64,000 bases of DNA from Hemiscyllium ocellatum. Lineage: Eukaryota. Positions 785-44,392 of the stretch are shown here, in pieces (the stretch's first letter is position 1; the number at the start of each line of letters is the position of its first letter). Location of the stretch: the NCBI RefSeq assembly GCF_020745735.1, contig NC_083405.1, forward strand, positions 62,586,345 to 62,650,344, given 5' to 3'. The notes beneath the pieces are model-generated. The model made no database searches. It worked only from the letters and a program-made list of their open reading frames with translations, and was not told the DNA's origin. The position numbers were made by a program, and so were the translations under genes.

Positions 785-1114
785 TTTGCTCATGGGATGT
801 GGGTGTCACTGGAGAAACTAGCATTTACTGTCCATCATAATTGTTCATAGGCAAATGCTGTAGGCTTGGGAACACATGCAGGTCAAACTCAGTACAGATG
901 ACAAATTTCCTTTTCTAAATGGTATGAGTGAATCAGAGGCTTTTTACAACAATCAACAATTGTTTCCATTAGACTGGCTTTTTTTTTCAGATTTTCATCA
1001 AATTCAAGTTTCACTATCTACCATGGTGGGATTTGAACCGCTGTCACCAGGACATTCGTCTGGGGTTCTGGATTACTGGTCCAGTGGCATGGCCACAATG
1101 TCCCCATGTTCCTC
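785..1114 (-). mobile_element. tRNA-derived SINE sharing both head/body and 3' tail with the LINE at 30633-33780
   Basis: - strand B box GGTTCAAATCC; body resembles 30795-30870; tail AGTAAATGCTAG...CACCCACATCCCATGA resembles 33720-33765. Confidence 0.75.
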
Positions 1115-4795: not shown

Positions 4796-5329
4796 CCTTG
4801 CCTCTCATTGTAACATTGCTTGTCCAACAATCATTCAGTTGGGCAGAAATTTACTCCAATTATGTATTGGGAAGAGCCAAAATCCATGCCGCAAACAATT
4901 TCCTATCTGATAATTTCATCCTCCTCGTTGATTTAACTGTCTTACTAATAAGGTTGATTGCATATCCTCAATCTGATAAACAATTGAAGGCTGCCAAATA
5001 GTTTTTACAGGCAGGCAAATGACCTTTAAAGAAGCACTTTCAAATTGAAAATGTTTCCAGTTTCTATTGTAATTAAGGACGTAAAATACATTATACACAC
5101 ATGTACAAATTGGCATGAAACTGAAAAAAATCCATTGTCTATATCACTATAAACAGCAAATTGAAACGGACTTCGAAAATTTCAAAAACTTTTATGAAAA
5201 TTGCAGATTGCAATAATTTTTTTGGCATAGATTATGCAATTTAAAAGTCCACCCAATTCTCCTGGTCAAGTAAACAGCATTGCTCACTGAACTACAGTTC
5301 ATGTGGCATATCACTTGAAGTGCACAGGT

Positions 5330-6421: not shown

Positions 6422-8292
6422 ATGTTTCAGTTACACAGGGACATTAACAAGACCACATTTTGCATACTGTACTCAGTATTCATGTACTTCTCCTTATTTA
6501 AGCAAGAATGCAAATGCATTGAGGTGCTTCAAAGGAGGTTTACTAGATTGATACTTTAATCACTGTTTTAAAAATAGAGGTTTTACCCTCTTAAGACAAA
6601 GGTAAGGAGATTTTTTTTCTCTCAGAGGGTTGTGTAATTTTGGAACTCTGCCTCAGAGAGATGGAATATTTTTCAGATAGAAGATTTTATTCGGCAGGAA
6701 AATCAAAGATTATCAAGACTAGATGGGAACGTGGAATTCAAAAAACAAACAGATATGCCATGATCTTATTGAATAGTAGAGCACGCTTTAGGAGTTGAAA
6801 AAGTTGACTGGGGGCAGATGTTTGTAGGTAAAGAATGGCTGGAAAATTGGAAGCCTTCAAAAATGAGATAACGAGAGTTCAGATACAGTATGCTCCTGTT
6901 GAGTGAAGGGCAACACTGGGGTAGGTCTAGCAAAATACTGGATGACAAGAGAAATTGAGGTGTTGGTTAGGAAAAGGTCAGGCAGACAGCAGAGATCGGG
7001 TGAATTCCTTGAAGACAATTGGAGTATACTTAAGAGAGAAAGAAGGAGGACAAAATGGGGACGTGAGATAGTTTTGACAAATAGGGTTAAGGAGAATCCA
7101 GAGAGCTTCTACAAATACATCAAAGGCAAAAGAGCAATTAGGGAGAGAATAGGGTCCCTTTAAAGATTAACAAGGCAGTCAATGTGTGGAAATTCAGGAA
7201 ATGGGGATATACTAAACACTTATTTTGCATCAGTGGAAAACAATGTGGAAGATATGGAATGTGGGGAAATAATAGCGACATCTTGAAAAAGATATTATAG
7301 ACGAGTTGGCGCTGGACGTCTTAAAATGAATAAATGTGGATAAATCCCTGGACATGATCAGGTGAACCCTAGAACTCTGCAGGAAGCTAGGGAAGATACT
7401 GCTAGGCTCCTTGCTGAAATATATGTATCATCAATAGCCAAGGTGGAGCGCCAGAAGACTAGAAATTGGCTAATATTGGTGTCATTATTTAAGAAAGGTG
7501 GTAAGGAAAACCTAGGGAACTGTAGCCAGAGAACCTGACATCAGTGACGGGCAAGTTGTTGGAGGGAATCCTGAGGGACAGGACTTGCATGCATTTGAAA
7601 AGACAAGGACTGATTAGGGATAGTCAACATGGCTGTGCATGGGAAATCATGTCTCACATATTTGATTGAGTATTTTTGAAGAAGTCACAAAGAGGATTGA
7701 TGAGGGCAGAGCAGAGGATGTGATCTATATGGACTTCAGGGAGGTGTTTGACAAGGTTCCTTATGGGAGTCTAGTTGGCAAGGTTAGATCACATGGAATA
7801 CAGGGAGAACTAGCCATTTGGATACAGAACTGGCTCAAAAGGTAGAAGGTGGTGGGGGGGGGTTACTTTTCAGACTAGAGACCTTGTGGTGTGTCACAAG
7901 GATCGGTGAAAGGTTCACTGCTTTTTATCATTTACATACATGATTTGGATATGAACATAGGAGGTATGGTTACTAAGTATGCAGATGACACCAAAGTTGG
8001 AGGTATGGTGTACAGTAAAAAAAGTTACCTCAGAGTACAATGGGATCTTGATCACATGGGCCAATGGGCCGGGGAGTGGCAGATGAAGGTTTATTTAGAT
8101 AAATGTGAGCTGCTGCATTTTGGAAAGGCAAATCAGGGCAGGACTTATACACTAAATGGTAAGGTCCTGGGGACTCTTGCTGAACAAAGAGTCCTTGTAG
8201 TGTAGGTTCATAGTTTCTTGAAAGTGGATTCCCAGGTAGACAGAACAGTGAAGGAGGTATTTGGTATGCTTGCCTTTATTCGTCAGTGCATT

Positions 8293-8603
8293 GATTAGAT
8301 TAGACTTACAGTGTGGAAACAGACCCTTCGGCCCAACAAGTCCACACCGACCCACCGAAGCGCAACCCACCCATACCCCTACATTTACCCCTTACCTAAC
8401 ACTACGGGCAATTTAGCATGGCCAATTCACCTGACCCGCACATCTTTGGACTGTGGGAGGAAACCGGAGCACCTGGAGGAAACCCATGCAGACACGGGGA
8501 GAACGTGCAAACTCCACACAGTCAGTCGCCTGAGTCGGGAATTGAACCCGGGTCTCTGGCGCTGTGAGGCAGCAGTGCTAATCACTGTGCCACCGTGCTG
8601 CCC
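8293..8603 (-). mobile_element. HE1 SINE (V-SINE), young
   Basis: - strand GGGCAGCACGGTGGCACAGTG head, B box GGTTCAATTCC, V-domain GGGTTTCCTCC..GTGCTCCGGTTTCCTCCCACA, CR1-like tail with (TCTAA)n. Confidence 0.95.
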
Positions 8604-23755: not shown

Positions 23756-26073
23756 ACTTGACCTACTCTTGGAAAATAGGACAAGGCAAGTGACTGAGGT
23801 GTCAGTGGGGGAACATTTGGGGCAAGTAACCATAATTCTATTAGTTTTAAAATAGTGATGGAAAAAGATAGACCAGATCTAAAAGTGAAGTTCTAAATTG
23901 GAGAAAGGCCCAATTTTGATGGTATTAGGCAAGAACTTTGAAAAGTTGACTGGGGGCAGATGTTCGCAGGTAAAGGGACGGCTGGAAAATGGGAAGCCTT
24001 CAGAAATGAGATAATGACAATCCAGAGAAAGTATATTCCTGTCAGGGTGAAAGGTAAGGCTGGTAGATATAGGGAATGCTGGCTGACTAAAGAAATTGAG
24101 GGTTTGGTTAAGAAAAAGAAGGAAGCATATGTCAGGTATAGACAGGATAGATCAAGTGAATCCTTAGAACAGTATAAAGGAAGTAGGAGTATAATTAAGA
24201 GGGAAATCAGGAGAGCAAAAAGGTGACATGAGATAGCTTTGGCAAATACGGTCAAGGAGAATCCAAAGAGTTTTTACAAATACATTAAGGACAAAAGGGT
24301 AACTAGGGAGAGAATAGGGCCCCTCAAAGGTCAGTAAGGCGGCCTTTGTGTGGAGCCGCAGAAAATGGGGGAGATACTAAATGAGCATTTTGCATCAGTA
24401 CATACTGTGGAAAAGGATATGGAAGATATAGACTGTAGGGAAATAGATGGTGACATTTAACAAAATGTCCAGATTACAGAGGAGCAAGTGCTGGATGTCT
24501 TGAAACACAAAGGTGGATAAATCCCCACGATCTGATCAGGTGTACCCGAGAACTCTGTGAGAAGCTAGAGAAGTAACTGTTGGGTCACTTGCTGAGATAT
24601 TTGTATCATTGATAGTCACAGGTGAGGTGCCAGAAGACTGGAAGTTGGCTAACATAGTGCCACTATTTAAGAAGGGTGGTAAAGACAAGCCAGGGAACCA
24701 TAGACCAGTGAGCCTGACCTCAGTGGTGGGCACGTTGTTGGAGGAAATCCAGAGGGACAGGATGCATATGTATTTGGAAAGACAAGGACTGATTAGGGAT
24801 AGTCAACATGGCTTTGTGCGTGGGAAATCATGTCTCACAAACTTGATTGAGTTTTTTGAGGAAGTAACAAAGAGGATTGATGAGGGCAGAGTGGTAGATG
24901 TGATCTATATGGACTTCAGTAAAGCATTCAAAAGGTTCCCCATGGGAGACTTATTAGCAAAGTTAAGTCTCACGGAATACAGAGAGAACTAGCCATTTGG
25001 ATACAGAACTGGCTCAAAGATAGAAGACAGAGGGTGGTGGTGGAGGGTTGTTTTTCAGACTGGAGGCCTGTGACCAATGGATTGCCACAAGGATCAGTGC
25101 TGGGTCCTCTACTTTTTGTCATTTACATAAATGATTTGGATGCGAGCATAAGAGGTATAGTTGATATGTTTGCAGATGACACGAAAATTGGAGGTTTAGG
25201 ACAGCGAAGAGATTACCTCAGATGACAACAGGATCTTGACCAGATGGGCCAATGGGCTGAGACATAGCAGATGGAGTTTAATTCAGATAAATGCAAGGTG
25301 CTGCATTTTGGAAAAGCAGGACTTAGCAGGACTTATACACTTAATGGTCAGGTCCTAGGGAGTGTTACTGAACAAACAGACCTTGGAATGCAGGTTCATA
25401 GCTCCTTGAAAGTGGAGTAACTGGTAGATAGGATAGTGAAAAAGGCATTTGGTAATCTTTCCTTTATCGGTCAGAGTATTGAGTACAGGTGTTGGGAGGT
25501 CAGTCTGTGGTTATACAGGACACAGTTGGAATATTGCGTGCAATTCTGGTCTCCTTCCTATCAGAAAGATGTTGTGAAAGTTGAAAGGGTTCAGAGAAGA
25601 TTTACAAGTATGTTGCCAGGGTTGGAGGATTTCAGCTATAGGGAGAGGCTGAACAGGCTGGGGCTGATTCCCAGGAGCATCGGAGGCTAAGGGGTGACAT
25701 TATAAAGGTTTACAAAATTATGAGGGGCATGGATAGGATAAATAGACAGTCTTTTCCCTGGGGTGGGGAGTTCAAAACTAGTGGGCATAGATTTAGGGTG
25801 AGAGGGAAAAGATATAAAAAAGACCTAAGGGATAACTTTTTCACGCAGAGAGTAGTACGTGTATGGAATGAGCTACCAGAGGAAGTGGAGGAGGCTAGTA
25901 CAATTGCAACATTTAAAAGGCATGTATATGTTATATATGAATAAGATGGGTTTGGAGGGATATGGGCCAGGTGCTGGCAGGTGGGACTAAATTGGGTTGG
26001 GATATCTGGTCAGATTGGATGAGGTGGACTGAAGGGTCTGTTTCCGTGCTGTACATCTCTATGACTCTATGAC
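23756..26073 (+). mobile_element. Young CR1 LINE ORF2 plus 3' end, pseudogenised
   Basis: [62 protein letters not shown]; tail (CTCTATGA)2. Confidence 0.97.
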
Positions 26074-27460: not shown

Positions 27461-27818
27461 AAGTTAACAATATCACCAAAATAACTAATTAACAACTCAA
27501 GAAAAATAGTAGTACAGGTGGTGTGTCAAAACCTCAGTATGTGGGAGCTCAAGGATACCATTGTGGTCCAGGGCAAATAAACCTGTGGTAAATGTTTGAA
27601 ATTTATGCAGCTTCACCTTGGAGTTAAATCAGAGTTCATGGTTCGGGTCCAGTGAGCCTCTGAGGAAGGATATTAACTCTGATTTCTCTCCAGAGAGGCT
27701 GCCAGACCTGCTGAGCTTTTCCAGCAATTGCTGTTTTTGGTTCTGAATTCCAACATCTAGCTGGAATTTGGTTTTGGTTCACCCTAGAGTTTATGAGCTG
27801 GAGGCTGAATTACAAACA

Positions 27819-27890
27819 GGATCCAAACTCAGGTCCCCAGAACATTTGCTGGGTCTCTGGATTGCAATAATAGCACTAGGCCATTGCCTC
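27819..27890 (-). mobile_element. Inverted tRNA-like head of the 30633 LINE/SINE family
   Basis: Reverse complement GAGGCAATGGCCTAGTG...GTTCTGGGGACCTGAGTTTGGATC matches 30633-30712. Confidence 0.75.
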
Positions 27891-29880: not shown

Positions 29881-32800
29881 CTTTCCAGAACACATCAGAT
29901 AATGACTATAATTGTGAGTAAGGTAATGGCTGAAATAAAAATGGACAAGTTTACCAAACCATGTAACTTTCAGCTGCCGAGCTTCCAATCAATTCAAAAA
30001 TGTGGAGGATTTGACCCACTAGCCACCTGACTAAGGAGCAGCACTCCGAAAGCTTGTACTTGCAAATAAACCTGCTGTACTGTAACCTGGTGTTCTGTGA
30101 TTTTTAAATAAGTAATTCAAAGGCACGAGGCTTGAACTTATTCTTCTTGTTTGCAGAGAATAATGTTTGCATATATAATTGCATGTCACCACTAAAAAGC
30201 CTAAATGACCATGTTAAAGCCCCATGATTATTTTTGATTGGTTGTTAGTTTGTGGTTCAAAAAAAGAATTGGCAGCTAACATGAAAGGGAAGCAAAAATC
30301 TTTTAAAGATGATATAAATACTAAAAGGATTGTAAATCAAGGAGCGGGTCCAATTAGAAGCCAAAAAAGGAGGCTACTTCTTGAACCTTTTCAAAAGAAC
30401 ACTTGACAAAGCCAAGGACACCAGATAGAGCAGTGAAAATGGTGCACTTGCAAATACAATCTGTTTTATGGAGCCATTGACTCTGTAACACTTTCAAAGA
30501 AAGGTCATGTGCCCCAGTTTTAGTATCCCCTTTAAGCTGTGCAGCTACCCAGACACCCTGTCATGCTGACTAACGTGCCAATGCACTGGCTTACTCATGT
30601 GCAGGTTGCAGTTGCATGCGGAATTCAGAGGTCGGCAATGGCCTAGTGGTATTATCACTAGACTATTACTCCAGAAACTCAGCTAATGTTCTGGGGACTT
30701 GAGTTTGAATCCTGCCATGGCAGATGGTGGAATCTGAATTCAATAAATAAAAAATCTGGAATTAAGAATCTGCAGGTGACCATAAAACCATCACATTCGC
30801 TAATGTCCCGCAGGGAAGGTTATCTGCCATCCTCATCTGGTCTGGTCTACATGTAACTCCAGACCCAGAGTAACGTGGCTGACACTTAACAGCCCTCTGA
30901 ATTGGCGAAGCAAGCCACTCAATTGTAGCAACTGATACAAAGTTTAAATAAAATGAACAGACCACCTAGCATTCACCCAGGCATTGGGAAATACATCAGA
31001 AACAGCCCTGTCGACACAACAGATGCTCCTTACTAACATCTGGGAGAGCTGTCTCACAGACTAGTCAAACAACTGCCTAACACTGTCCGTAATGTATGAT
31101 TCTGTGAGCATGACTATGTCCCAGACAACACCATCACCATCCCTGGATATGACCTATCCCACTGGCAGGACATACCCAGCAGAACTGGTGGCACAGTGGT
31201 ATACAGTTGAGAAGGAATGCCCCGGGAGTCTTCAACATTGACTCCAGATCTCGAAGTCTTGCAGCTTTAGGTTAAGCCTGGACAAGAAACCTTCCAGCTG
31301 ATTACCATGTACCATCCTCCCTCAGCAGATGAATCAATACTTCTCCATGTTGAACAACACTTGGACAAAGCACTTAGTGTGGCAAGGTGATAGAATGTCC
31401 TCTGGGTGGGGGAATTTCAGTGTCAAGAGTGGCTTGGCAGCAACACTACTGATTAAGCTCGTCATGTCCTAAAAGACATAGCTGCTAGACTGGGTCTGCA
31501 GTGGTGGTAAGGGAACTAACAAGAGGGAAAAACATACCTTACCTCATCCTTTCCAATCTGCCAGCTGCAGGTGTATCTATCCATGACAGTATTGGTAAGA
31601 GCAACCATCGCATAATCCTAGTGGAGACAAAGTCCTGCCTTCACACTAGGAATAACCTACATCATGTTGTGTAGCAGTATCACCTTGGGACAGACTTCAA
31701 CAAAGCTAGAATTCAAGACTGGGCACCCATCCTGGGCACTGTGGGCCAACAACAGCAGCAGAATTGTACTCCAGACAATCTGTAACCTCATGACCCGGCA
31801 TATCCCCCACTCAGCTATGACCATCAAGCAGGGGAACAACCCTGGTCAATGGAGAGTGCAGGAGGGCATACCAGGAGCAGTATCAGGCATAGCTGCAGAT
31901 GAGGTGTCAACATGGTGAAGCCACCAAACAGGAAGACTTGCATGTCAAACATCAGAGGCAGCAAATGATAGATAGAGTGAAGAGATCCCACAACAAATGG
32001 ATCAGATCTAAGCTCTGCAGTCCTGCCCATTCAGTCATGAGTGGTGGTAGAAAATTAAACAACTCACTGGCAGAGGACACTCCATAAAATACCCTCATCC
32101 TCAAATGATGAAAGAACCCAACACATCAGTACAAAAGATAAGGCTGAAGCTTCAGCAGCAATCTTCAGCCAGAACTGCCGTGCAGATTATCCATCTTGGC
32201 CTCCACCAGTTGTCCCCAGCATTATAGATGTCTGTTTTCAGTCAATTCGATTCACTCCACGTGATATCAAGAAACGGTTGGAGACACTGGATACTGCAAA
32301 GGCTACGGGCCCTGACAATATTCCGGGAACAGTACTGAAAGTTTATGCTCCAGAATGTGGCTCTCCCTTAGCAAGCTCTTCCAGTACAGTTACAATACTG
32401 GCATCGATCCAAAAATGTGGAAAAACATCAAGTACACAAAAAGCAGGACAGATCCAACCATCCAATTATTGCCCTATCTGTCTATTCTCAATCATCAGTA
32501 AGTGATGGAAGATGTCATCAATTGTGCTATCCGAACAGCACTTGCTCCATAAAAAAAAACCTGCTCGGTGACGCCCAGTTTGGATTCTACCAGGGCCACA
32601 CAACCCCTGACCTCATTATAGCCCTGGCTCAAATGTGAGTACAAGAGCTGAATTCTAGAGGTGAAGTGAGAGCCAAAGCCCATGACATCAAGGTTGTATT
32701 CAACTGAGTGTGACATCAAGAAAAACTGGAATCAATGGGTATTGGGGTGAAAATTCTCCACTGGTTGAGGTTGTATTTGCTTTGAACAATAGAGAGACTT

Positions 32801-33074
32801 GGGCTGACAAGTGGCAAGTAACATTCGCGCCATGCAAGTTCCAGGCAATGAACATCTTCAATAAGAAACAATCTAAATGCTGTTCCTTGACATTCAGTAG
32901 TGTTACCATCACTGAATACACTACTATCAACATCCTGCAAGTTATTATTGACCAGAAACTCAACTGGACTCACCGCATAAACACAGTGACTACGAGAGCA
33001 GGAGAGGGGCTAGGCATACTGCAGTGAGTAACTCACCTCCCGACTCCCCAAAGCCTGTCTAACACCTATAAGGC

Positions 33075-33281
33075 TGAAAATGTGTTGCTGGTTAAAGCAC
33101 AGCAGGTTAGGCAGCATCCAAGGAATAGGAAATTCGACGTTTCGGGCATAAGCCCTTCATCAAGAATTATGCCCGAAACGTCGAATTTCCTATTCCTTGG
33201 ATGCTGCCTAACCTGCTGTGCTTTAACCAGCAACACATTTTCAGCTGTGATCTCCAGCATCTGCAGACCTCATTTTTTACC
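33075..33281. mobile_element. Young palindromic PLE-derived insert (family A)
   Basis: Perfect 79-bp inverted repeat 33073-33151/33167-33245 with 15-nt loop; perfect 16-bp TSD CTAACACCTATAAGGC (33059-33074, 33282-33297). Confidence 0.95.
33131..33168 (-). ncRNA. Minimal type I hammerhead ribozyme motif (U3 variant)
   Basis: AATTC-TTGATGA-A-GGGC-TTAT-GCCC-GAAA-C-GTC-GAATT: 5-bp stem I, 4-bp stem II, palindromic ACGT stem III, GUC triplet; C3 replaced by U. Confidence 0.7.
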
Positions 33282-34319
33282 CTAACACCTATAAGGCAAA
33301 AGTTAGGAATGTGATGGAATATTCCCCACTTGCCTTGATGAATGCAGCTCCAACAACACTGGAGAAGGTTGATATCATCCAGGACACAGCAGTCTGCTTG
33401 ACTGGCATGATGTCCACTCCCTCTACCATTGATGCTCTAACTAAAAGAAGCACTGCAGAATTTCACCAAATATCTTCAGACAGCACCTTCCAAACCTATG
33501 ATCACTTCCATCTAGAAGGACAAGGATAGCAGACACATGGAAACATCACCACCTGCAAGTTCCCCTCCAAGGCACTCCCATCCTGACTTGGAAATATAAT
33601 TGCTGTTCCTTCACTGTTGCTCTGTCAAAGTCCTGGAATTCCCTCCCTAATAGTATTGTGGGTCAACCCATAGCAATGGTTCAAGAAAGCGGCTCCTTCT
33701 CAAGGGCAAATAGGAATGGGCAATAAATTCTGGCCAGCCAGAGAGAGACACATCCCACAAATGAATTAATTTTTTAAAAATTGAGGTATGTTGTTCAATT
33801 TATGGCTGTAAACCAAATGGTTTACTATCTTCCTTTTTCTGATTTTGGTCAAGTTCTGGTTTTTGTTTAAAAAAAACATTTTGTATACTTTTTCATGCTG
33901 AGCAAGAACGCCACCAGAGGACATCTTGACAGCCTAGTTTGAAACCAATTTTCTGCTTGCATGAACCTCAAATCCAGCAGGCCACAAATCCTACATTCAC
34001 TGTTCAGCATTTAAATTAAGAGTCAATGATTCTGGCCTCCGATCCTACCTCAAATATTGTCTAACGCTTTTCCTGTAACCTTCAAGACCTGCTACATGAT
34101 TGTTCTTCAGACAGTGGTTACAAAAGTTCAACAACTACTGTTACAGATTAAAAAACCAAATTCCATGATGCAAGCTATACATTAGACTGATAATGGCTGC
34201 TGCTCATCACATGTTCGACATTCTGGTTATTTGTTCAATAATATGCTCCCTCTTAATGTGATATCACAGTAAGTATCAATCATGTTTGTATGACACTTTT
34301 CCTCTACATTTATGATATA

Positions 34320-42604: not shown

Positions 42605-44392
42605 ATTTTTTAATTCACTCATAGGATGTGGGCATTACTTAGTCCAGCATTTCTTGCCCATCTCTATTTGCCCTTGAGAAAGTGGTGGTGAGCTGCCTTC
42701 TTATTACTGCTGCAGTCCAAATGCTATCGGTAGATTCACAATGCCTTTAGGGACCAAATTCCAGAATTTTGACCCAGCGACAGGGAGATCAATATATTTC
42801 CATGTCAGGATGATGAGTGGCTTACAGGAAAACTTGCAAGTGGTAGTGTTCCCATGTACCTGCTACCCTTGTCCTTCTAAATGGAAGTGGACATGGGCTG
42901 CACTCATCCAGGCAATTGATGAGTATTCTGTCAGACTTGTGCATTGTAGATGGTGAACAGGCTTTGGGAAGTCAAGAGGTGACTTACTCGCTGCTGCATT
43001 CCAAGCCTCTGACCTGCTCTCGTAGATACTGTGTTTACGTGGCAAGTCCAGTTCAGTTTCTAGTCAATGGTAACCCCAGGATGCAGATAATAGGGGATTC
43101 AGTGTTGGTAATACAAATGAATGCCAAGGAGCAGTAGATAGATTATCTCTTATTGGAGATGGTCATTGTCTGGCATTTGCTGGCACGAATGTTGCCTGAA
43201 TATTGTCCATCTCATGGTACATTTGGACATGGACTGCTTCAATATCAAAGGTGCCATGAATAGTCCTGAACACTGTAATCATCAGCAAACATCCCCACAT
43301 CTAACGTTAATAATAGAGAAGGTCATTGAAGTAGTAGGTGAAGATGGTTGGGTCTAGGGCATTACACGAAGGCACTCCTGCACAGATGTCCTGAAGCAGA
43401 AATGACTACCTCCAACCATCTTGTGTGTCAGGTATGATTCCAACCGGTGGAGAGTTTTCTCTCAATTCCTACCGAATCCAGTTTTGCTCGGGCTCATTGG
43501 TGCAACATGCAGTTAAATGTGCTTTGATATCAAGGGCTATCACTATCCCACCTCTGGAATTCAGTTTTTGTCAATGTTTGAATCAAAACTGTAATGAGGT
43601 CAGAAGCCAAATGATCCTGCAGGACCCAAACTGGGTATCACTAAGCGGCACGGTGGCACGGTGGGCGGCACGGTGGCACAGTGGTTAGCACTGCTGCCTC
43701 ACAGCGCCTGTAGACCCGGGTTCAATTCCCGACTCAGGCGACTGACTGTGTGGAGTTTGCACGTTCTCCCCGTGTCTGCGTGGGTTTCCTCCGGGTGCTC
43801 CGGTTTCCTCCCACAGTCCAAAGATGTGCGGGTCAGGTGAATTGGCCAAGCTAAATTGCCCGTAGTGTTAGGTAAGGGGTAAATGTAGGGGTATGGGTGG
43901 GTTGCGCTTCGGCGGGTCGGTGTGGACTTGTTGGGCCGAAGGGCCTGTTTCCACACTGTAAGTCTAATCTAATCTATCTAAGCAGCTAAATAGTAAGCAG
44001 GTGCTGCTTGACAGCACTGTTAATGATACCTTTCAACACTGTGCTGATGATCAAGACTGTACTGATGGGACAGTAGTTAGTTTGGTTGGATTTGTCCAGC
44101 TTTTTGCGCACAAGACATAGCTGGGCAATTTTCCATAATGCTGGGTAGATGCCAGAGTTATAGCTGTACTGGAACAGTTTGGCTTGGGGAGCAGCAAATT
44201 CTGAAGCACACGTCTTCAGAATTATGTCAGGGACCATGATCTTGACAATATTCTGTGTCTTCAACTGTTTCTTGAGATCATGTACAGTGAATCAAATTGA
44301 CTGATGACTTGCACCTGTGATGCTGGACATCTCTGGAGGAGGCAGAGGTATTTGATCTACTTGCACTTCTGACTGAAGATTGTTGTAAATGC
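42605..44392 (-). mobile_element. Second copy of the tRNA-headed LINE family (5'-truncated, RT core retained)
   Basis: LWKIAQLCLVRKK..NYCPIS (ORF 43986..44264), GMFADD near 43285, same 3' tail as 33700-33770. Confidence 0.85.
43647..43977 (+). mobile_element. Very young HE1 SINE with duplicated 5' end
   Basis: CpG-rich; TSD CTAAGC (43641-43646, 43978-43983); near-identical to 8293-8603. Confidence 0.97.

What the first reader, a model, noticed from the sequence alone, without database searches (positions are those of the whole stretch)
30633..33780. LINE with a tRNA-derived Pol III head and almost no T4 terminators: candidate Pol III-transcribed autonomous retrotransposon
Seen: a perfect A box (TGGCCTAGTGG, 30639-30649) and a CpG-decayed B box (GTTTGAATCC, 30703-30712) run through a ~350-nt body straight into APE endonuclease and RT coding sequence, with no ORF1 and no SINE tail or TSD in between. 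An imperfect TSD (AATTCAGAGGT 30622-30632 / AATTGAGGT 33779-33787) brackets the whole unit. Excluding the later palindrome insert and the terminal T6, I count one T4 run (32235-32238) on ~2.9 kb of sense strand against roughly 15 A4+ runs; the 2.3-kb CR1 at 23756-26073 has about 10 T4+ runs. The second copy (42605-44392) has two sense T4 runs, and none of the three is shared between copies, so the ancestor was probably T4-free. Known: Pol III stops at T4+ in vertebrates, and LINEs are normally Pol II units. Inference: this LINE was transcribed full length by Pol III and would need cap-independent translation. I know of no description of this, but could not search.
Basis: partly seen in the sequence, partly recalled or inferred. 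Interest (0 to 1): 0.9.

Follow-up and report, generated by a model that had tools for sequence, protein, structure and literature searches.

The report
Shark LINE with a tRNA-type head
This is an old, broken copy of a shark jumping-gene family (a LINE) whose every full-length copy begins with a tRNA-derived RNA-polymerase-III promoter and whose body carries no polymerase-III stop signals, so it may be the first protein-coding retrotransposon copied by the enzyme that normally makes only small RNAs.

Summary
The structure is real and is a property of the family, not chance adjacency. Three independent LINE copies run head, then about 300 nt of 5' UTR, then endonuclease and RT. They lie in this window, in Heterodontus francisci (L002) and in Heptranchias perlo (L009). 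A fourth copy (L006) is 5'-truncated inside the UTR. Assembly contigs from three species also join the SINE-like body to the endonuclease start.

The abundant local SINE (785-1114) is the LINE's 5' UTR plus its stop codon and 3' UTR.

The T4 claim holds better at family level than in this copy:
- In 15 copies (21.5 kb of sense strand) none of the 8 T4+ runs is shared, so the master was T4-free.
- A synonymous-codon shuffle gives P(0)=0.012.
- A headless distant relative shows no depletion.

Not supported: the TSD (P=0.20 by chance) and the 2.9-kb length. This copy has lost about 220 nt that include the RT catalytic box.

Pol III transcription of the whole LINE is untested. I put it at about 0.4, against about 0.35 for Pol II. 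No description was found in the searchable literature; the nearest is Kojima 2018.

The scan's first readers noted the same structure at nine or more other places in this genome (unchecked).

The parts
30627..30712 (+). tRNA-derived SINE-type head at the extreme 5' end of the LINE. It contains the A box (30639-30649) and the B box (30702-30712).
   Evidence: A+B pair: 5 in the window against 0.03 by chance. The same head with 63-65 nt spacing is found in L002, L009, L008_SINE and the window SINE. Contig loose ends put the family's 5' end at GGGGAGG just upstream of 30634. Rfam tRNA: no hit.
30713..30947 (+). Rest of the 5' UTR ('body'). Up to about 30897-30927 it is shared with the SINE; the last 25-50 nt are LINE-only.
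   Evidence: Alignments A1-A3 with L002, L006 and L009. Summed depth is 20,000-150,000 up to about 30870, then falls to 15-60 at 30954-30995.
30948..31025 (+). Leader between the 5' UTR and the endonuclease domain. It has no conserved AUG.
   Evidence: ATG only in L002; ATA in the window, L006 and L009. The frame relation to the endonuclease differs between copies.
31026..31625 (+). Apurinic-type endonuclease domain, decayed, with a 19-nt deletion at 31040/41.
   Evidence: tblastn with P0023 residues 46-207 and 206-550. Pfam Exo_endo_phos_2 on the homologous piece of L002, E=4.6e-7. Loose-end consensus TTACTAACATCTGGGGGCTAGTGCCAAAAT before 31041.
32230..33394 (+). Reverse-transcriptase region, decayed. 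About 220 nt carrying the FADD catalytic box are missing between 32767 and 32783, and the region is interrupted by the insert.
   Evidence: tblastn with P0023 residues 479-854, with a gap at residues 644-729. L001:8124-8360 holds the missing part, including FADD. Pfam RVT_1 on L001:8014-8469, E=2e-20.
33059..33299 (.). Foreign palindromic repeat inserted later; not part of the LINE.
   Evidence: Inverted arms 33073-33245, 95% over 174 nt. Other copies join 33059->33300. Summed depth is 1-2 million.
33395..33713 (+). C-terminal domain (WNSLP..IVG motif) and the probable stop codon TAG at 33711-33713.
   Evidence: Translation frames. L006's open frame ends ...QQFKKAAHHHLLKGN* at the homologous TAG.
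33714..33769 (+). 3' UTR, which is also the SINE tail: AATAAA, a hairpin (GCTGGC...GCCAGC within GGGATGGGC...GCCCACATCCC), then GAAT repeats.
   Evidence: The hairpin folds at -25.4 and -24 kcal/mol, z=-3.2 and -3.6, in preserved copies; it is decayed here. Tails are listed.
33770..33775 (+). T6 directly after the tail, followed by A5.
   Evidence: A T4-T9 run follows the tail in 5 of 16 copies; A7-12 alone follows in most young copies. It is unclear whether the T run comes from the element or from the target.
42605..44392 (-). Second copy of the same LINE, 5'-truncated.
   Evidence: blastn at 68-79% identity. Its 2 T4 runs are private.
785..1114 (-). SINE derivative: head, 5' UTR body and 3' UTR tail.
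   Evidence: Pairwise alignment. The better-preserved homologues L008:27688-28043 and L006:3168-3480(-) show the junction CCCTCT|TAGGGATGG.
27817..27888 (-). Isolated head fragment of the same family, cut off by another repeat.
   Evidence: blastn 78% over 81 nt; sequence.

Best explanation
SHOWN
- 30627-33775 is an ancient, dead copy of a compact (about 3.2 kb), single-ORF endonuclease-RT LINE family of sharks. It belongs to the CR1/L2 group and is probably L2-like.
- The family's 5' UTR begins with a tRNA-derived head carrying A and B boxes.
- The head is inherited with the LINE.
- The abundant local SINE is the same element without its ORF: about 300 nt of 5' UTR, then the stop codon and a roughly 60-nt 3' UTR hairpin tail.
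- The family master had no T4+ run anywhere on its sense strand.

INFERRED, about 0.4
- The head works in the LINE as it must in the SINE. TFIIIC/TFIIIB assemble on the A and B boxes, and Pol III starts about 12 nt upstream of the A box. That start is the element's first base, which is why the head is copied into every full-length daughter.
- With no T4 terminator in the way, Pol III can run through the ORF to beyond the tail.
- The family's RT recognises the 3' hairpin and GAAT/A-rich end. It therefore mobilises this long Pol III RNA exactly as it mobilises the SINE RNA.
- The protein may come from the same uncapped RNA by non-canonical initiation (no conserved AUG precedes the endonuclease). 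Alternatively it may come from rarer Pol II read-through transcripts.
For: - Independent headed copies: window, L002 (Heterodontus francisci) and L009 (Heptranchias perlo), in alignments A1 and A3.
- L006 shows the same UTR-to-ORF continuity but is truncated at about nt 150.
- At least 12 contigs in 3 species join positions 30854-30931 to 31041.
- All three LINE copies that reach the 5' end start at the head's first bases. None starts at the head/body border.
- In Heptranchias the LINE and SINE 5' regions are each other's nearest relatives: head 80% and body 89-94%, against 60-77% across genomes.
- T4: 8 runs in 21.5 kb from 15 copies, none shared, with 3-11 other copies covering each site.
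- A synonymous-codon shuffle of 2529 nt of the best-preserved ORF expects 3.34+-1.42 runs, P(0)=0.012. A codon-order shuffle gives P(0)=0.033.
- Comparators show no depletion. The headless relative L005 has 3 observed against 4.47 expected (P=0.30), plus 5 in its 3' UTR. The CR1 in this window has 10 in 2.3 kb.
- The 3' hairpin is significantly stable.
- From established knowledge: SINEs with LINE-type tails are Pol III transcripts that end in flanking T runs and are mobilised through tail recognition. Uncapped R2 and RTE RNAs are translated (Ruminski et al. 2011, as cited in PMC5786205).
Against: - No transcription data were used.
- No natural Pol III transcript of about 3 kb is known. Kojima (PMC10886601) argues that Pol III processivity limits such elements to about 1.3 kb or less.
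- The T4 test is post hoc, and T3 runs are also somewhat low (7 against 11.6). A general T-run bias may therefore contribute.
- Most young copies end in A7-12 with AATAAA about 40 nt upstream, as expected for Pol II cleavage and polyadenylation.
- Pol III RNA is uncapped and would be poorly translated.
- The head fails tRNA covariance models.
- Only three 5' ends were seen directly.
Confidence: 0.4

Rival explanations
1. The structure is the same, but Pol II makes the LINE's RNA. The 5' UTR (head plus body) acts as an internal Pol II promoter that starts at the element's first base, as in other LINEs. The A and B boxes matter only for the SINE offspring. The T4-free body is chance or a composition effect.
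For: - All LINEs studied so far are Pol II units (stated in PMC10886601 and PMC5786205).
- The mRNA must be translated.
- AATAAA lies about 40 nt before the 3' end, and 8 of 11 young copies carry A7-12 tails.
- In this single copy the T4 paucity is not significant.
- T3 runs are also low.
Against: - A T4-free master has P about 0.01-0.03, and the headless relative shows no depletion.
- This reading gives no reason for a LINE lineage to keep recognisable A and B boxes, at fixed spacing, at its first bases in three shark orders.
- No conserved AUG precedes the endonuclease.
Confidence: 0.35
2. The LINE's own RNA is headless. Headed LINE copies arise again and again when the RT, or recombination, switches from LINE RNA to the abundant SINE RNA inside the shared ~300-nt 5' UTR. 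In this reading the SINE arose as Kojima proposed: a UTR-only bipartite LINE that gained a tRNA head.
For: - Template switching is the accepted route to SINE birth and to U6-L1 chimeras (PMC5786205; PMC5499810).
- The shared homology would leave no visible junction.
- LINE and SINE heads are alike within a genome, as repeated exchange would predict.
Against: - All 3 LINE copies that reach the 5' end carry the head, and none begins at the head/body border.
- The only headless copy is truncated at an arbitrary point inside the body.
- Other first readers report nine or more further headed copies in this genome and no headless full-length one (unchecked).
- It needs one more event than 'headed LINE, then ORF deletion'.
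- It leaves the T4-free body unexplained.
Confidence: 0.12
3. The tRNA-like head is an RNA-processing signal. The LINE is co-transcribed within host Pol II transcripts, and RNase P cuts at the head's 5' end to release unit-length RNA. This would be analogous to the HDV-like ribozymes of R2 and RTE.
For: - Copies start precisely at the head.
- No conserved AUG precedes the endonuclease, as in ribozyme-processed LINEs.
- Ribozyme-based 5' processing of RTE, R2 and others is discussed in PMC5786205.
Against: - The head has no acceptor stem and fails tRNA models at E<=10.
- The minimum-energy fold is not a cloverleaf.
- It does not explain the lack of T4 runs.
Confidence: 0.05
4. Chance adjacency, or a one-off template-switch chimera of a SINE and a 5'-truncated LINE at this locus.
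For: The TSD around the unit is not significant, so single-unit insertion cannot be shown at this locus alone.
Against: The same colinear head-UTR-ORF structure occurs at independent loci in two other shark genomes and in contig joints. The SINE's tail is absent at the junction.
Confidence: 0.01

Closest known systems
SINEs built from a small-RNA head plus the 5' and 3' parts of a LINE. Examples: Bov-tA, SINE2_Gav, SINE2-1_EC, WALLSI2 and the AviRTE SINEs (Kojima 2018, PMC5786205; hagfish SINE1-1_EBu, PMC7245038).
   Same: The local SINE is head + LINE 5' UTR + LINE 3' UTR, as in those families.
   Different: - Those cases involve only the RTE and Vingi clades. This LINE has CR1/L2-group hallmarks.
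- In those cases the autonomous LINE has no head; the head is thought to be added to a bipartite derivative.
- Here the autonomous LINE itself carries the head, in three genomes.
RTE-1_DAn and relatives (one-sentence remark in PMC5786205 that these LINEs contain a tRNA-like sequence)
   Same: An autonomous LINE that holds a tRNA-like stretch.
   Different: The paper treated it as a nuisance in similarity searches. It gave no position, promoter boxes, SINE offspring or T-run analysis. The clade and host also differ. I could not inspect the sequence.
SacSINE1 / DeuSINEs of cartilaginous fishes and their partner L2-2_CM (Nishihara 2006; Luchetti 2017, PMC5499810)
   Same: A shark SINE with a tRNA head and a tail shared with an L2-type LINE. 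One earlier first-reader note calls the local SINE a DeuSINE.
   Different: Identity was not tested, because no SacSINE1 or Deu consensus was available to me. The published account shares only the tail with the LINE and does not place the head or body in the LINE.
TRIMp3 elements (Cassandra, Helenus, Ajax): LTR retrotransposons with Pol III promoters (PMC10886601)
   Same: Retroelements other than SINEs that carry a small-RNA-derived Pol III promoter at the start of their transcribed unit.
   Different: They are non-autonomous, non-coding, 1.3 kb or shorter, and LTR-type. This element is a 3.2-kb coding non-LTR element.
U6-L1 and other template-switch chimeras
   Same: A small Pol III RNA sequence fused to the 5' side of LINE sequence.
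   Different: Those are one-off dead copies with variable junctions to truncated LINEs. Here the junction is constant, the LINE is full length, and the structure is inherited across species.

Membership tests
Non-LTR retrotransposon (LINE) with endonuclease and RT | Apurinic-type endonuclease domain | tested here: met
   tblastn with P0023. Pfam Exo_endo_phos_2 on L002:3436-3645, E=4.6e-7. The window's own pieces fall below Pfam thresholds.
Non-LTR retrotransposon (LINE) with endonuclease and RT | Reverse-transcriptase domain with catalytic YXDD/FADD | tested here: met
   Met for the family: RVT_1 on L001:8014-8469, E=2e-20, FADD present. This window copy has lost that segment.
Non-LTR retrotransposon (LINE) with endonuclease and RT | Many 5'-truncated copies sharing one 3' end | tested here: met
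   Eight or more truncated copies in L007 and L008 all end at ...CCCATGAACGAAT. Window copy 2 is also truncated.
Non-LTR retrotransposon (LINE) with endonuclease and RT | Target-site duplication flanking the unit | tested here: inconclusive
One short copy (L008:54867-54945) has a 7-nt CTATCCA repeat at both flanks.
CR1/L2 group, L2-like clade | RT phylogeny with reference clades | not testable with these tools
   No named reference LINE proteins were available. Indirect evidence only: the C-terminal WN.LP..IV...FK motif, a 3' hairpin plus short GAAT repeats, and nearest full-length relatives that are single-ORF elements of 960-990 aa.
tRNA-derived SINE head (type-2 Pol III promoter) | A box TRGCNNAGTGG and B box GGTTCGANNCC in the right order and spacing | tested here: met
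   0 and 2 mismatches here, 63-65 nt spacing in four heads, chance expectation 0.03 per window.
tRNA-derived SINE head (type-2 Pol III promoter) | Recognisable tRNA cloverleaf or parent tRNA | tested here: not met
   No Rfam tRNA hit at E<=10. ARAGORN default finds none. At 70% threshold, 3 of 4 heads give an 88-94-nt class-II-like call, but random sequence gives 15%.
Bipartite LINE-derived SINE (Kojima 2018) | The SINE contains both 5' and 3' parts of its partner LINE behind a small-RNA head | tested here: met
Bipartite LINE-derived SINE (Kojima 2018) | The partner LINE itself lacks the head (head added to the deletion derivative) | tested here: not met
   The window, L002 and L009 LINE copies all carry the head.
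Complete Pol III transcription unit | No T4+ terminator between promoter and end of unit | tested here: met
   Met for the family master: 0 shared T4+ runs in 15 copies, P(0)=0.012. This copy has one private T4 at 32235.
Complete Pol III transcription unit | T-run terminator at the end of the unit | tested here: inconclusive
   A T4-T9 run directly follows the tail in 5 of 16 copies. The other copies have an A-run instead.
Complete Pol III transcription unit | Pol III dependence of the transcript | not testable with these tools
Standard RNA-seq would not tell the polymerases apart.
One-off template-switch chimera (U6-L1 type) | Unique event; junction not shared by other copies | tested here: not met
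   The same junctionless structure occurs at independent loci in three genomes.
SacSINE1 / DeuSINE | Deu domain in the SINE body | not testable with these tools
   No Deu or SacSINE1 sequence was reachable. PMC5499810 has no held supplements, and k-mer searches of the paper library found nothing.

The most novel reading that the evidence does not exclude
An autonomous LINE whose genomic RNA is made by RNA polymerase III from an internal tRNA-type promoter. In effect it is a 'long SINE' that encodes its own endonuclease-RT, kept free of T4 terminators by selection and translated without a cap. Its SINE partner would simply be its ORF-deleted form. That reverses the usual order of SINE birth (the LINE gains the head first, then loses the ORF). 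If the shared body proves to be the Deu domain, this would also give that conserved SINE core a LINE 5' UTR origin.
Probability: 0.35. Interest if true: 0.92.

Novelty: new variant of a known kind. Interest (0 to 1): 0.68.

Why it matters
LINEs are taken to be Pol II units and SINEs to be Pol III parasites that borrowed only the LINE's tail. Here the protein-coding partner itself starts with the Pol III promoter, and this holds across shark lineages that I take to be separated by very deep time. The SINE is its UTR-only derivative.

That gives a concrete, testable case for two open questions:
- How SINE heads and bodies arise. Here the evidence points to the LINE gaining a head first and then losing its ORF.
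- Whether Pol III can produce a kilobase-scale, coding retrotransposition template in vivo.

The T4-free body is the kind of footprint such use would leave. Heptranchias perlo still has copies about 94% alike, so experiments on natural copies are feasible.

If the Pol II reading is right, the finding is still a new clade and a new architecture for LINE-derived SINE bodies.

Tried and rejected
- ARAGORN and Rfam at gathering thresholds found nothing in the window. Rfam at E<=10 on the two heads gave only noise hits.
- The first depth profile suggested that the bridge 30920-31043 is about 35 times rarer than the endonuclease start. That could have meant most LINEs have another 5' end. Fine bins showed the jump at 31041 comes from a 19-nt deletion in this copy plus its divergence, not from a different upstream sequence. 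I therefore dropped it as evidence against the head.
- Protein routes that failed:
  - P0007 is a sushi-domain gene model with a LINE fragment.
  - P0005 and P0009 are not on record, and P0004 came without DNA.
  - The L002 linker piece found no homologue.
  - Most family hits are EukProt whale-shark models without contigs.
- The distant intact relative L005 has no tRNA-like head. The head is therefore not a clade-wide trait.
- I considered the T run after the tail as a built-in terminator. It is present in only 5 of 16 copies, and A-runs dominate, so I left it open.
- I looked for a start codon or a frameshift arrangement. The ATG seen in L002 is ATA in three other copies, and frames disagree between decayed copies. 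This is unresolved.
- Sequence-string searches of the paper library found nothing, and no supplements are held for the SacSINE1 paper.
- I built no consensus and no repaired ORF.


Full report
WHAT IS AT THE COORDINATES

The window is repeat-rich vertebrate DNA without N. Relatives of the element come from sharks: Heterodontus francisci, Heptranchias perlo, Rhincodon typus and Cetorhinus maximus.

Positions 30627-33775 (+) hold a heavily decayed non-LTR retrotransposon. Mapping the intact 983-aa relative P0023 onto it places residues 46-854 on 31037-33394.
- The endonuclease lies at about 31026-31625.
- The RT lies from about 32230 to 33394.
- The C-terminal WNSLP..IVG motif and a probable TAG stop are at 33711-33713.
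- A roughly 60-nt 3' UTR follows.

Pfam confirms both domains on better-preserved family members. RVT_1 scores E=2e-20 on L001 and Exo_endo_phos_2 scores E=4.6e-7 on L002.

No ORF1 is present. The copy is damaged in four ways:
- It has many stops and frameshifts.
- A 19-nt deletion lies at 31040/41.
- About 220 nt with the FADD catalytic box are lost between 32767 and 32783. The segment is present in L001.
- A foreign palindromic repeat sits at 33059-33299, which other copies lack.

The family unit is therefore about 3.2 kb, not 2.9 kb.

THE HEAD

TGGCCTAGTGG (30639-30649) is a perfect A box. AGTTTGAATCC (30702-30712) is a B box with two changes. The TG here and the CA in the SINE copy are the two decay products of one CpG.

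A+B pairs occur 5 times in the window against 0.03 expected; the other four belong to a different SINE family. The same boxes recur with 63-65 nt spacing in heads from three genomes.

The tRNA origin itself is weakly supported:
- The Rfam tRNA model is silent at E<=10.
- ARAGORN finds a class-II-like cloverleaf in 3 of 4 heads only at a threshold that also fires on 15% of random sequence.
- The minimum-energy fold is not a cloverleaf.

IS THE HEAD PART OF THE LINE?

- L002 (Heterodontus) was found through a protein fragment. It aligns colinearly to the window from the head's first bases, through the body and leader, into the endonuclease. L004 is the same locus and L003 a near copy, so I count them as one.
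- L009 (Heptranchias) is a third independent headed copy.
- L006 (Heptranchias) is the best-preserved copy, with a 526-aa open frame. It starts at an arbitrary point about 150 nt into the 5' UTR, an ordinary 5' truncation, and again shows UTR-to-ORF continuity.
- In Logan contigs of DNA runs from three related species, at least 12 contigs join 30854-30931 to 31041. A further 105-151 contigs per run continue upstream of 31041 with the family's N-terminal coding sequence.
- The locus itself is shared by all three species. Contigs run from the unique flank into the head, and one orthologous contig spans 30837-31046. The insertion is therefore old.
- Other first readers of this scan noted the same head-plus-LINE structure at nine or more other places in this genome. 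I treat these as leads only.

RELATION TO THE SINE

Cleaner Heptranchias copies show the join...TGCCCTCT|TAGGGATGGGCAATAAATGC... The 5' UTR up to about nt 300 is fused to the stop codon and 3' UTR. A second copy has the join 8 nt earlier. The SINE is thus the LINE minus its ORF.

Within Heptranchias, LINE and SINE 5' regions are nearest relatives. The head is 80% identical and the body 89-94%, against 60-77% between genomes. The two have therefore stayed one evolving lineage.

The 3' UTR forms a stable hairpin (z=-3.2 and -3.6) ahead of GAAT repeats. This is the usual recognition signal of stringent-type LINE/SINE pairs.

T RUNS

For this one copy they are not unusual: a dinucleotide shuffle expects 3.2+-1.6, P(<=1)=0.135.

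The family-level test is stronger.
- In 15 copies and fragments (21.5 kb of sense strand, three genomes) there are 8 T4+ runs. None is shared, although 3-11 other copies cover each site. The master therefore had none.
- Keeping the protein and codon usage of 2529 nt of L006's ORF, a synonymous shuffle gives 3.34+-1.42 runs and P(0)=0.012. A codon-order shuffle gives P(0)=0.033.
- The headless relative L005 (a 3.6-kb element on a TARA metagenome scaffold, with no tRNA-like head) has 3 against 4.47 expected in its ORF (P=0.30) and 5 more in its 3' UTR.
- The CR1 in this window has 10 in 2.3 kb.

There are caveats. The test is post hoc, and T3 runs are also low (7 against 11.6, P=0.065).

WHAT FAILS OR STAYS OPEN

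- The TSD is no better than 20% of random flank pairs, and it overlaps the head's own GGGGAGG start.
- 3' ends: most young copies end GAACGAAT + A7-12. A T4-T9 run sits between the tail and the A-run in 5 of 16 copies, including this one. In one short copy the 7-nt TSD lies beyond the A-run, so the A-run belongs to the insert. AATAAA lies about 40 nt upstream. This fits Pol II polyadenylation or a templated A-tail equally well.
- No conserved AUG precedes the endonuclease.

MECHANISM

Shown:
- The head is inherited with the LINE.
- Copies begin at the base where a type-2 promoter would start Pol III, about 12 nt before the A box.
- The body lacks terminators.
- The SINE uses the same head and tail.

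Inferred: Pol III starts at the head of LINE copies too and can read through. The RT then mobilises that RNA through the tail.

My estimates are:
- Pol III supplying the full-length template: about 0.4.
- Pol II with a dual-use 5' UTR: about 0.35.
- Recurrent LINE/SINE recombination: about 0.12.
- RNase P processing: about 0.05.
- Chance adjacency: about 0.01.

COMPARISON WITH WHAT IS KNOWN

Kojima (PMC5786205) described SINEs made of a head plus LINE 5' and 3' parts, only for the RTE and Vingi clades and with headless LINEs. [quoted passage not shown]

Kojima (PMC10886601) states that non-LTR elements are Pol II units and that Pol III limits element length.

Luchetti et al. (PMC5499810) describe the shark tRNA-Deu SINE SacSINE1 as sharing only its tail with L2-2_CM. 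Whether the present SINE is SacSINE1 could not be tested.

I found no description of a headed autonomous LINE. Repbase and Dfam were not searchable.

VERDICT

The Pol III reading is plausible and now has a modest statistical footprint, but it is untested.

Noticed in passing
window 33059-33299: The palindromic insert has arms at 33073-33245, 95% complementary over 174 nt. It belongs to a hyper-abundant family: summed contig depth is 1-2 million against 5-14 for single-copy flanks, in all three species.
   Followed up: partly
window 17970, 39521, 43674 (+), 37467 (-); also 8290-8555 / 43712-43977: A second tRNA-headed SINE family with intact A+B boxes and a CR1-type tail occurs at these positions; from memory it looks like the HE1/V-SINE type. 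Two copies in opposite orientation are 98% alike over 266 nt, so this family is young here.
   Followed up: no
window 30948-31025; L002:2800-2883; L006:4287-4373; L009:~5190-5277: No conserved start codon precedes the endonuclease. L002 has ATG where the window, L006 and L009 have ATA. In L002 and L006 that frame is offset from the endonuclease frame, giving a short overlapping mini-ORF of about 42 codons. All four copies are decayed here.
   Followed up: partly
window 33770-33775; L006:7189-7197; L006:3168-3185(-); L008:53256-53265; window 785-800(-): A T4-T9 run lies directly after the tail and before an A-run in 5 of 16 LINE and SINE copies. The other copies have only A7-12. It could be target preference for T(n)A(n), or it could derive from the RNA's 3' end.
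   Followed up: partly
L008 (Heptranchias perlo, 73.6 kb): Seven LINE fragments and one SINE of this family lie in 73 kb, at 88-94% identity to L006. The family was active far more recently in Heptranchias than in the window's genome, where copies differ by about 25%.
   Followed up: partly
Proteins P0007, P0163, P0193, P0141, P0028, P0225, P0229: Several annotated shark 'genes' contain stretches 53-82% identical to this LINE's ORF. Their names include sushi-domain protein, myoD family inhibitor domain-containing protein, aldo-keto reductase 1B1-like, DMBT1-like, CWC25, GPR139 and LRRC32-like. These are likely exonised fragments or gene-model artefacts.
   Followed up: no
L005 (TARA Oceans metagenome scaffold, 3619 nt): A complete, intact single-ORF LINE sits in a marine metagenome assembly: 347-nt 5' UTR, 983-aa endonuclease-RT and 320-nt 3' UTR. 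It is the nearest full-length relative found (about 35% identity) and has no tRNA-like head.
   Followed up: partly
window 31189-31199: A second perfect A-box match (TGGCACAGTGG) lies inside the endonuclease coding sequence (GGTVVY motif), with no B box downstream. It looks coincidental.
   Followed up: yes
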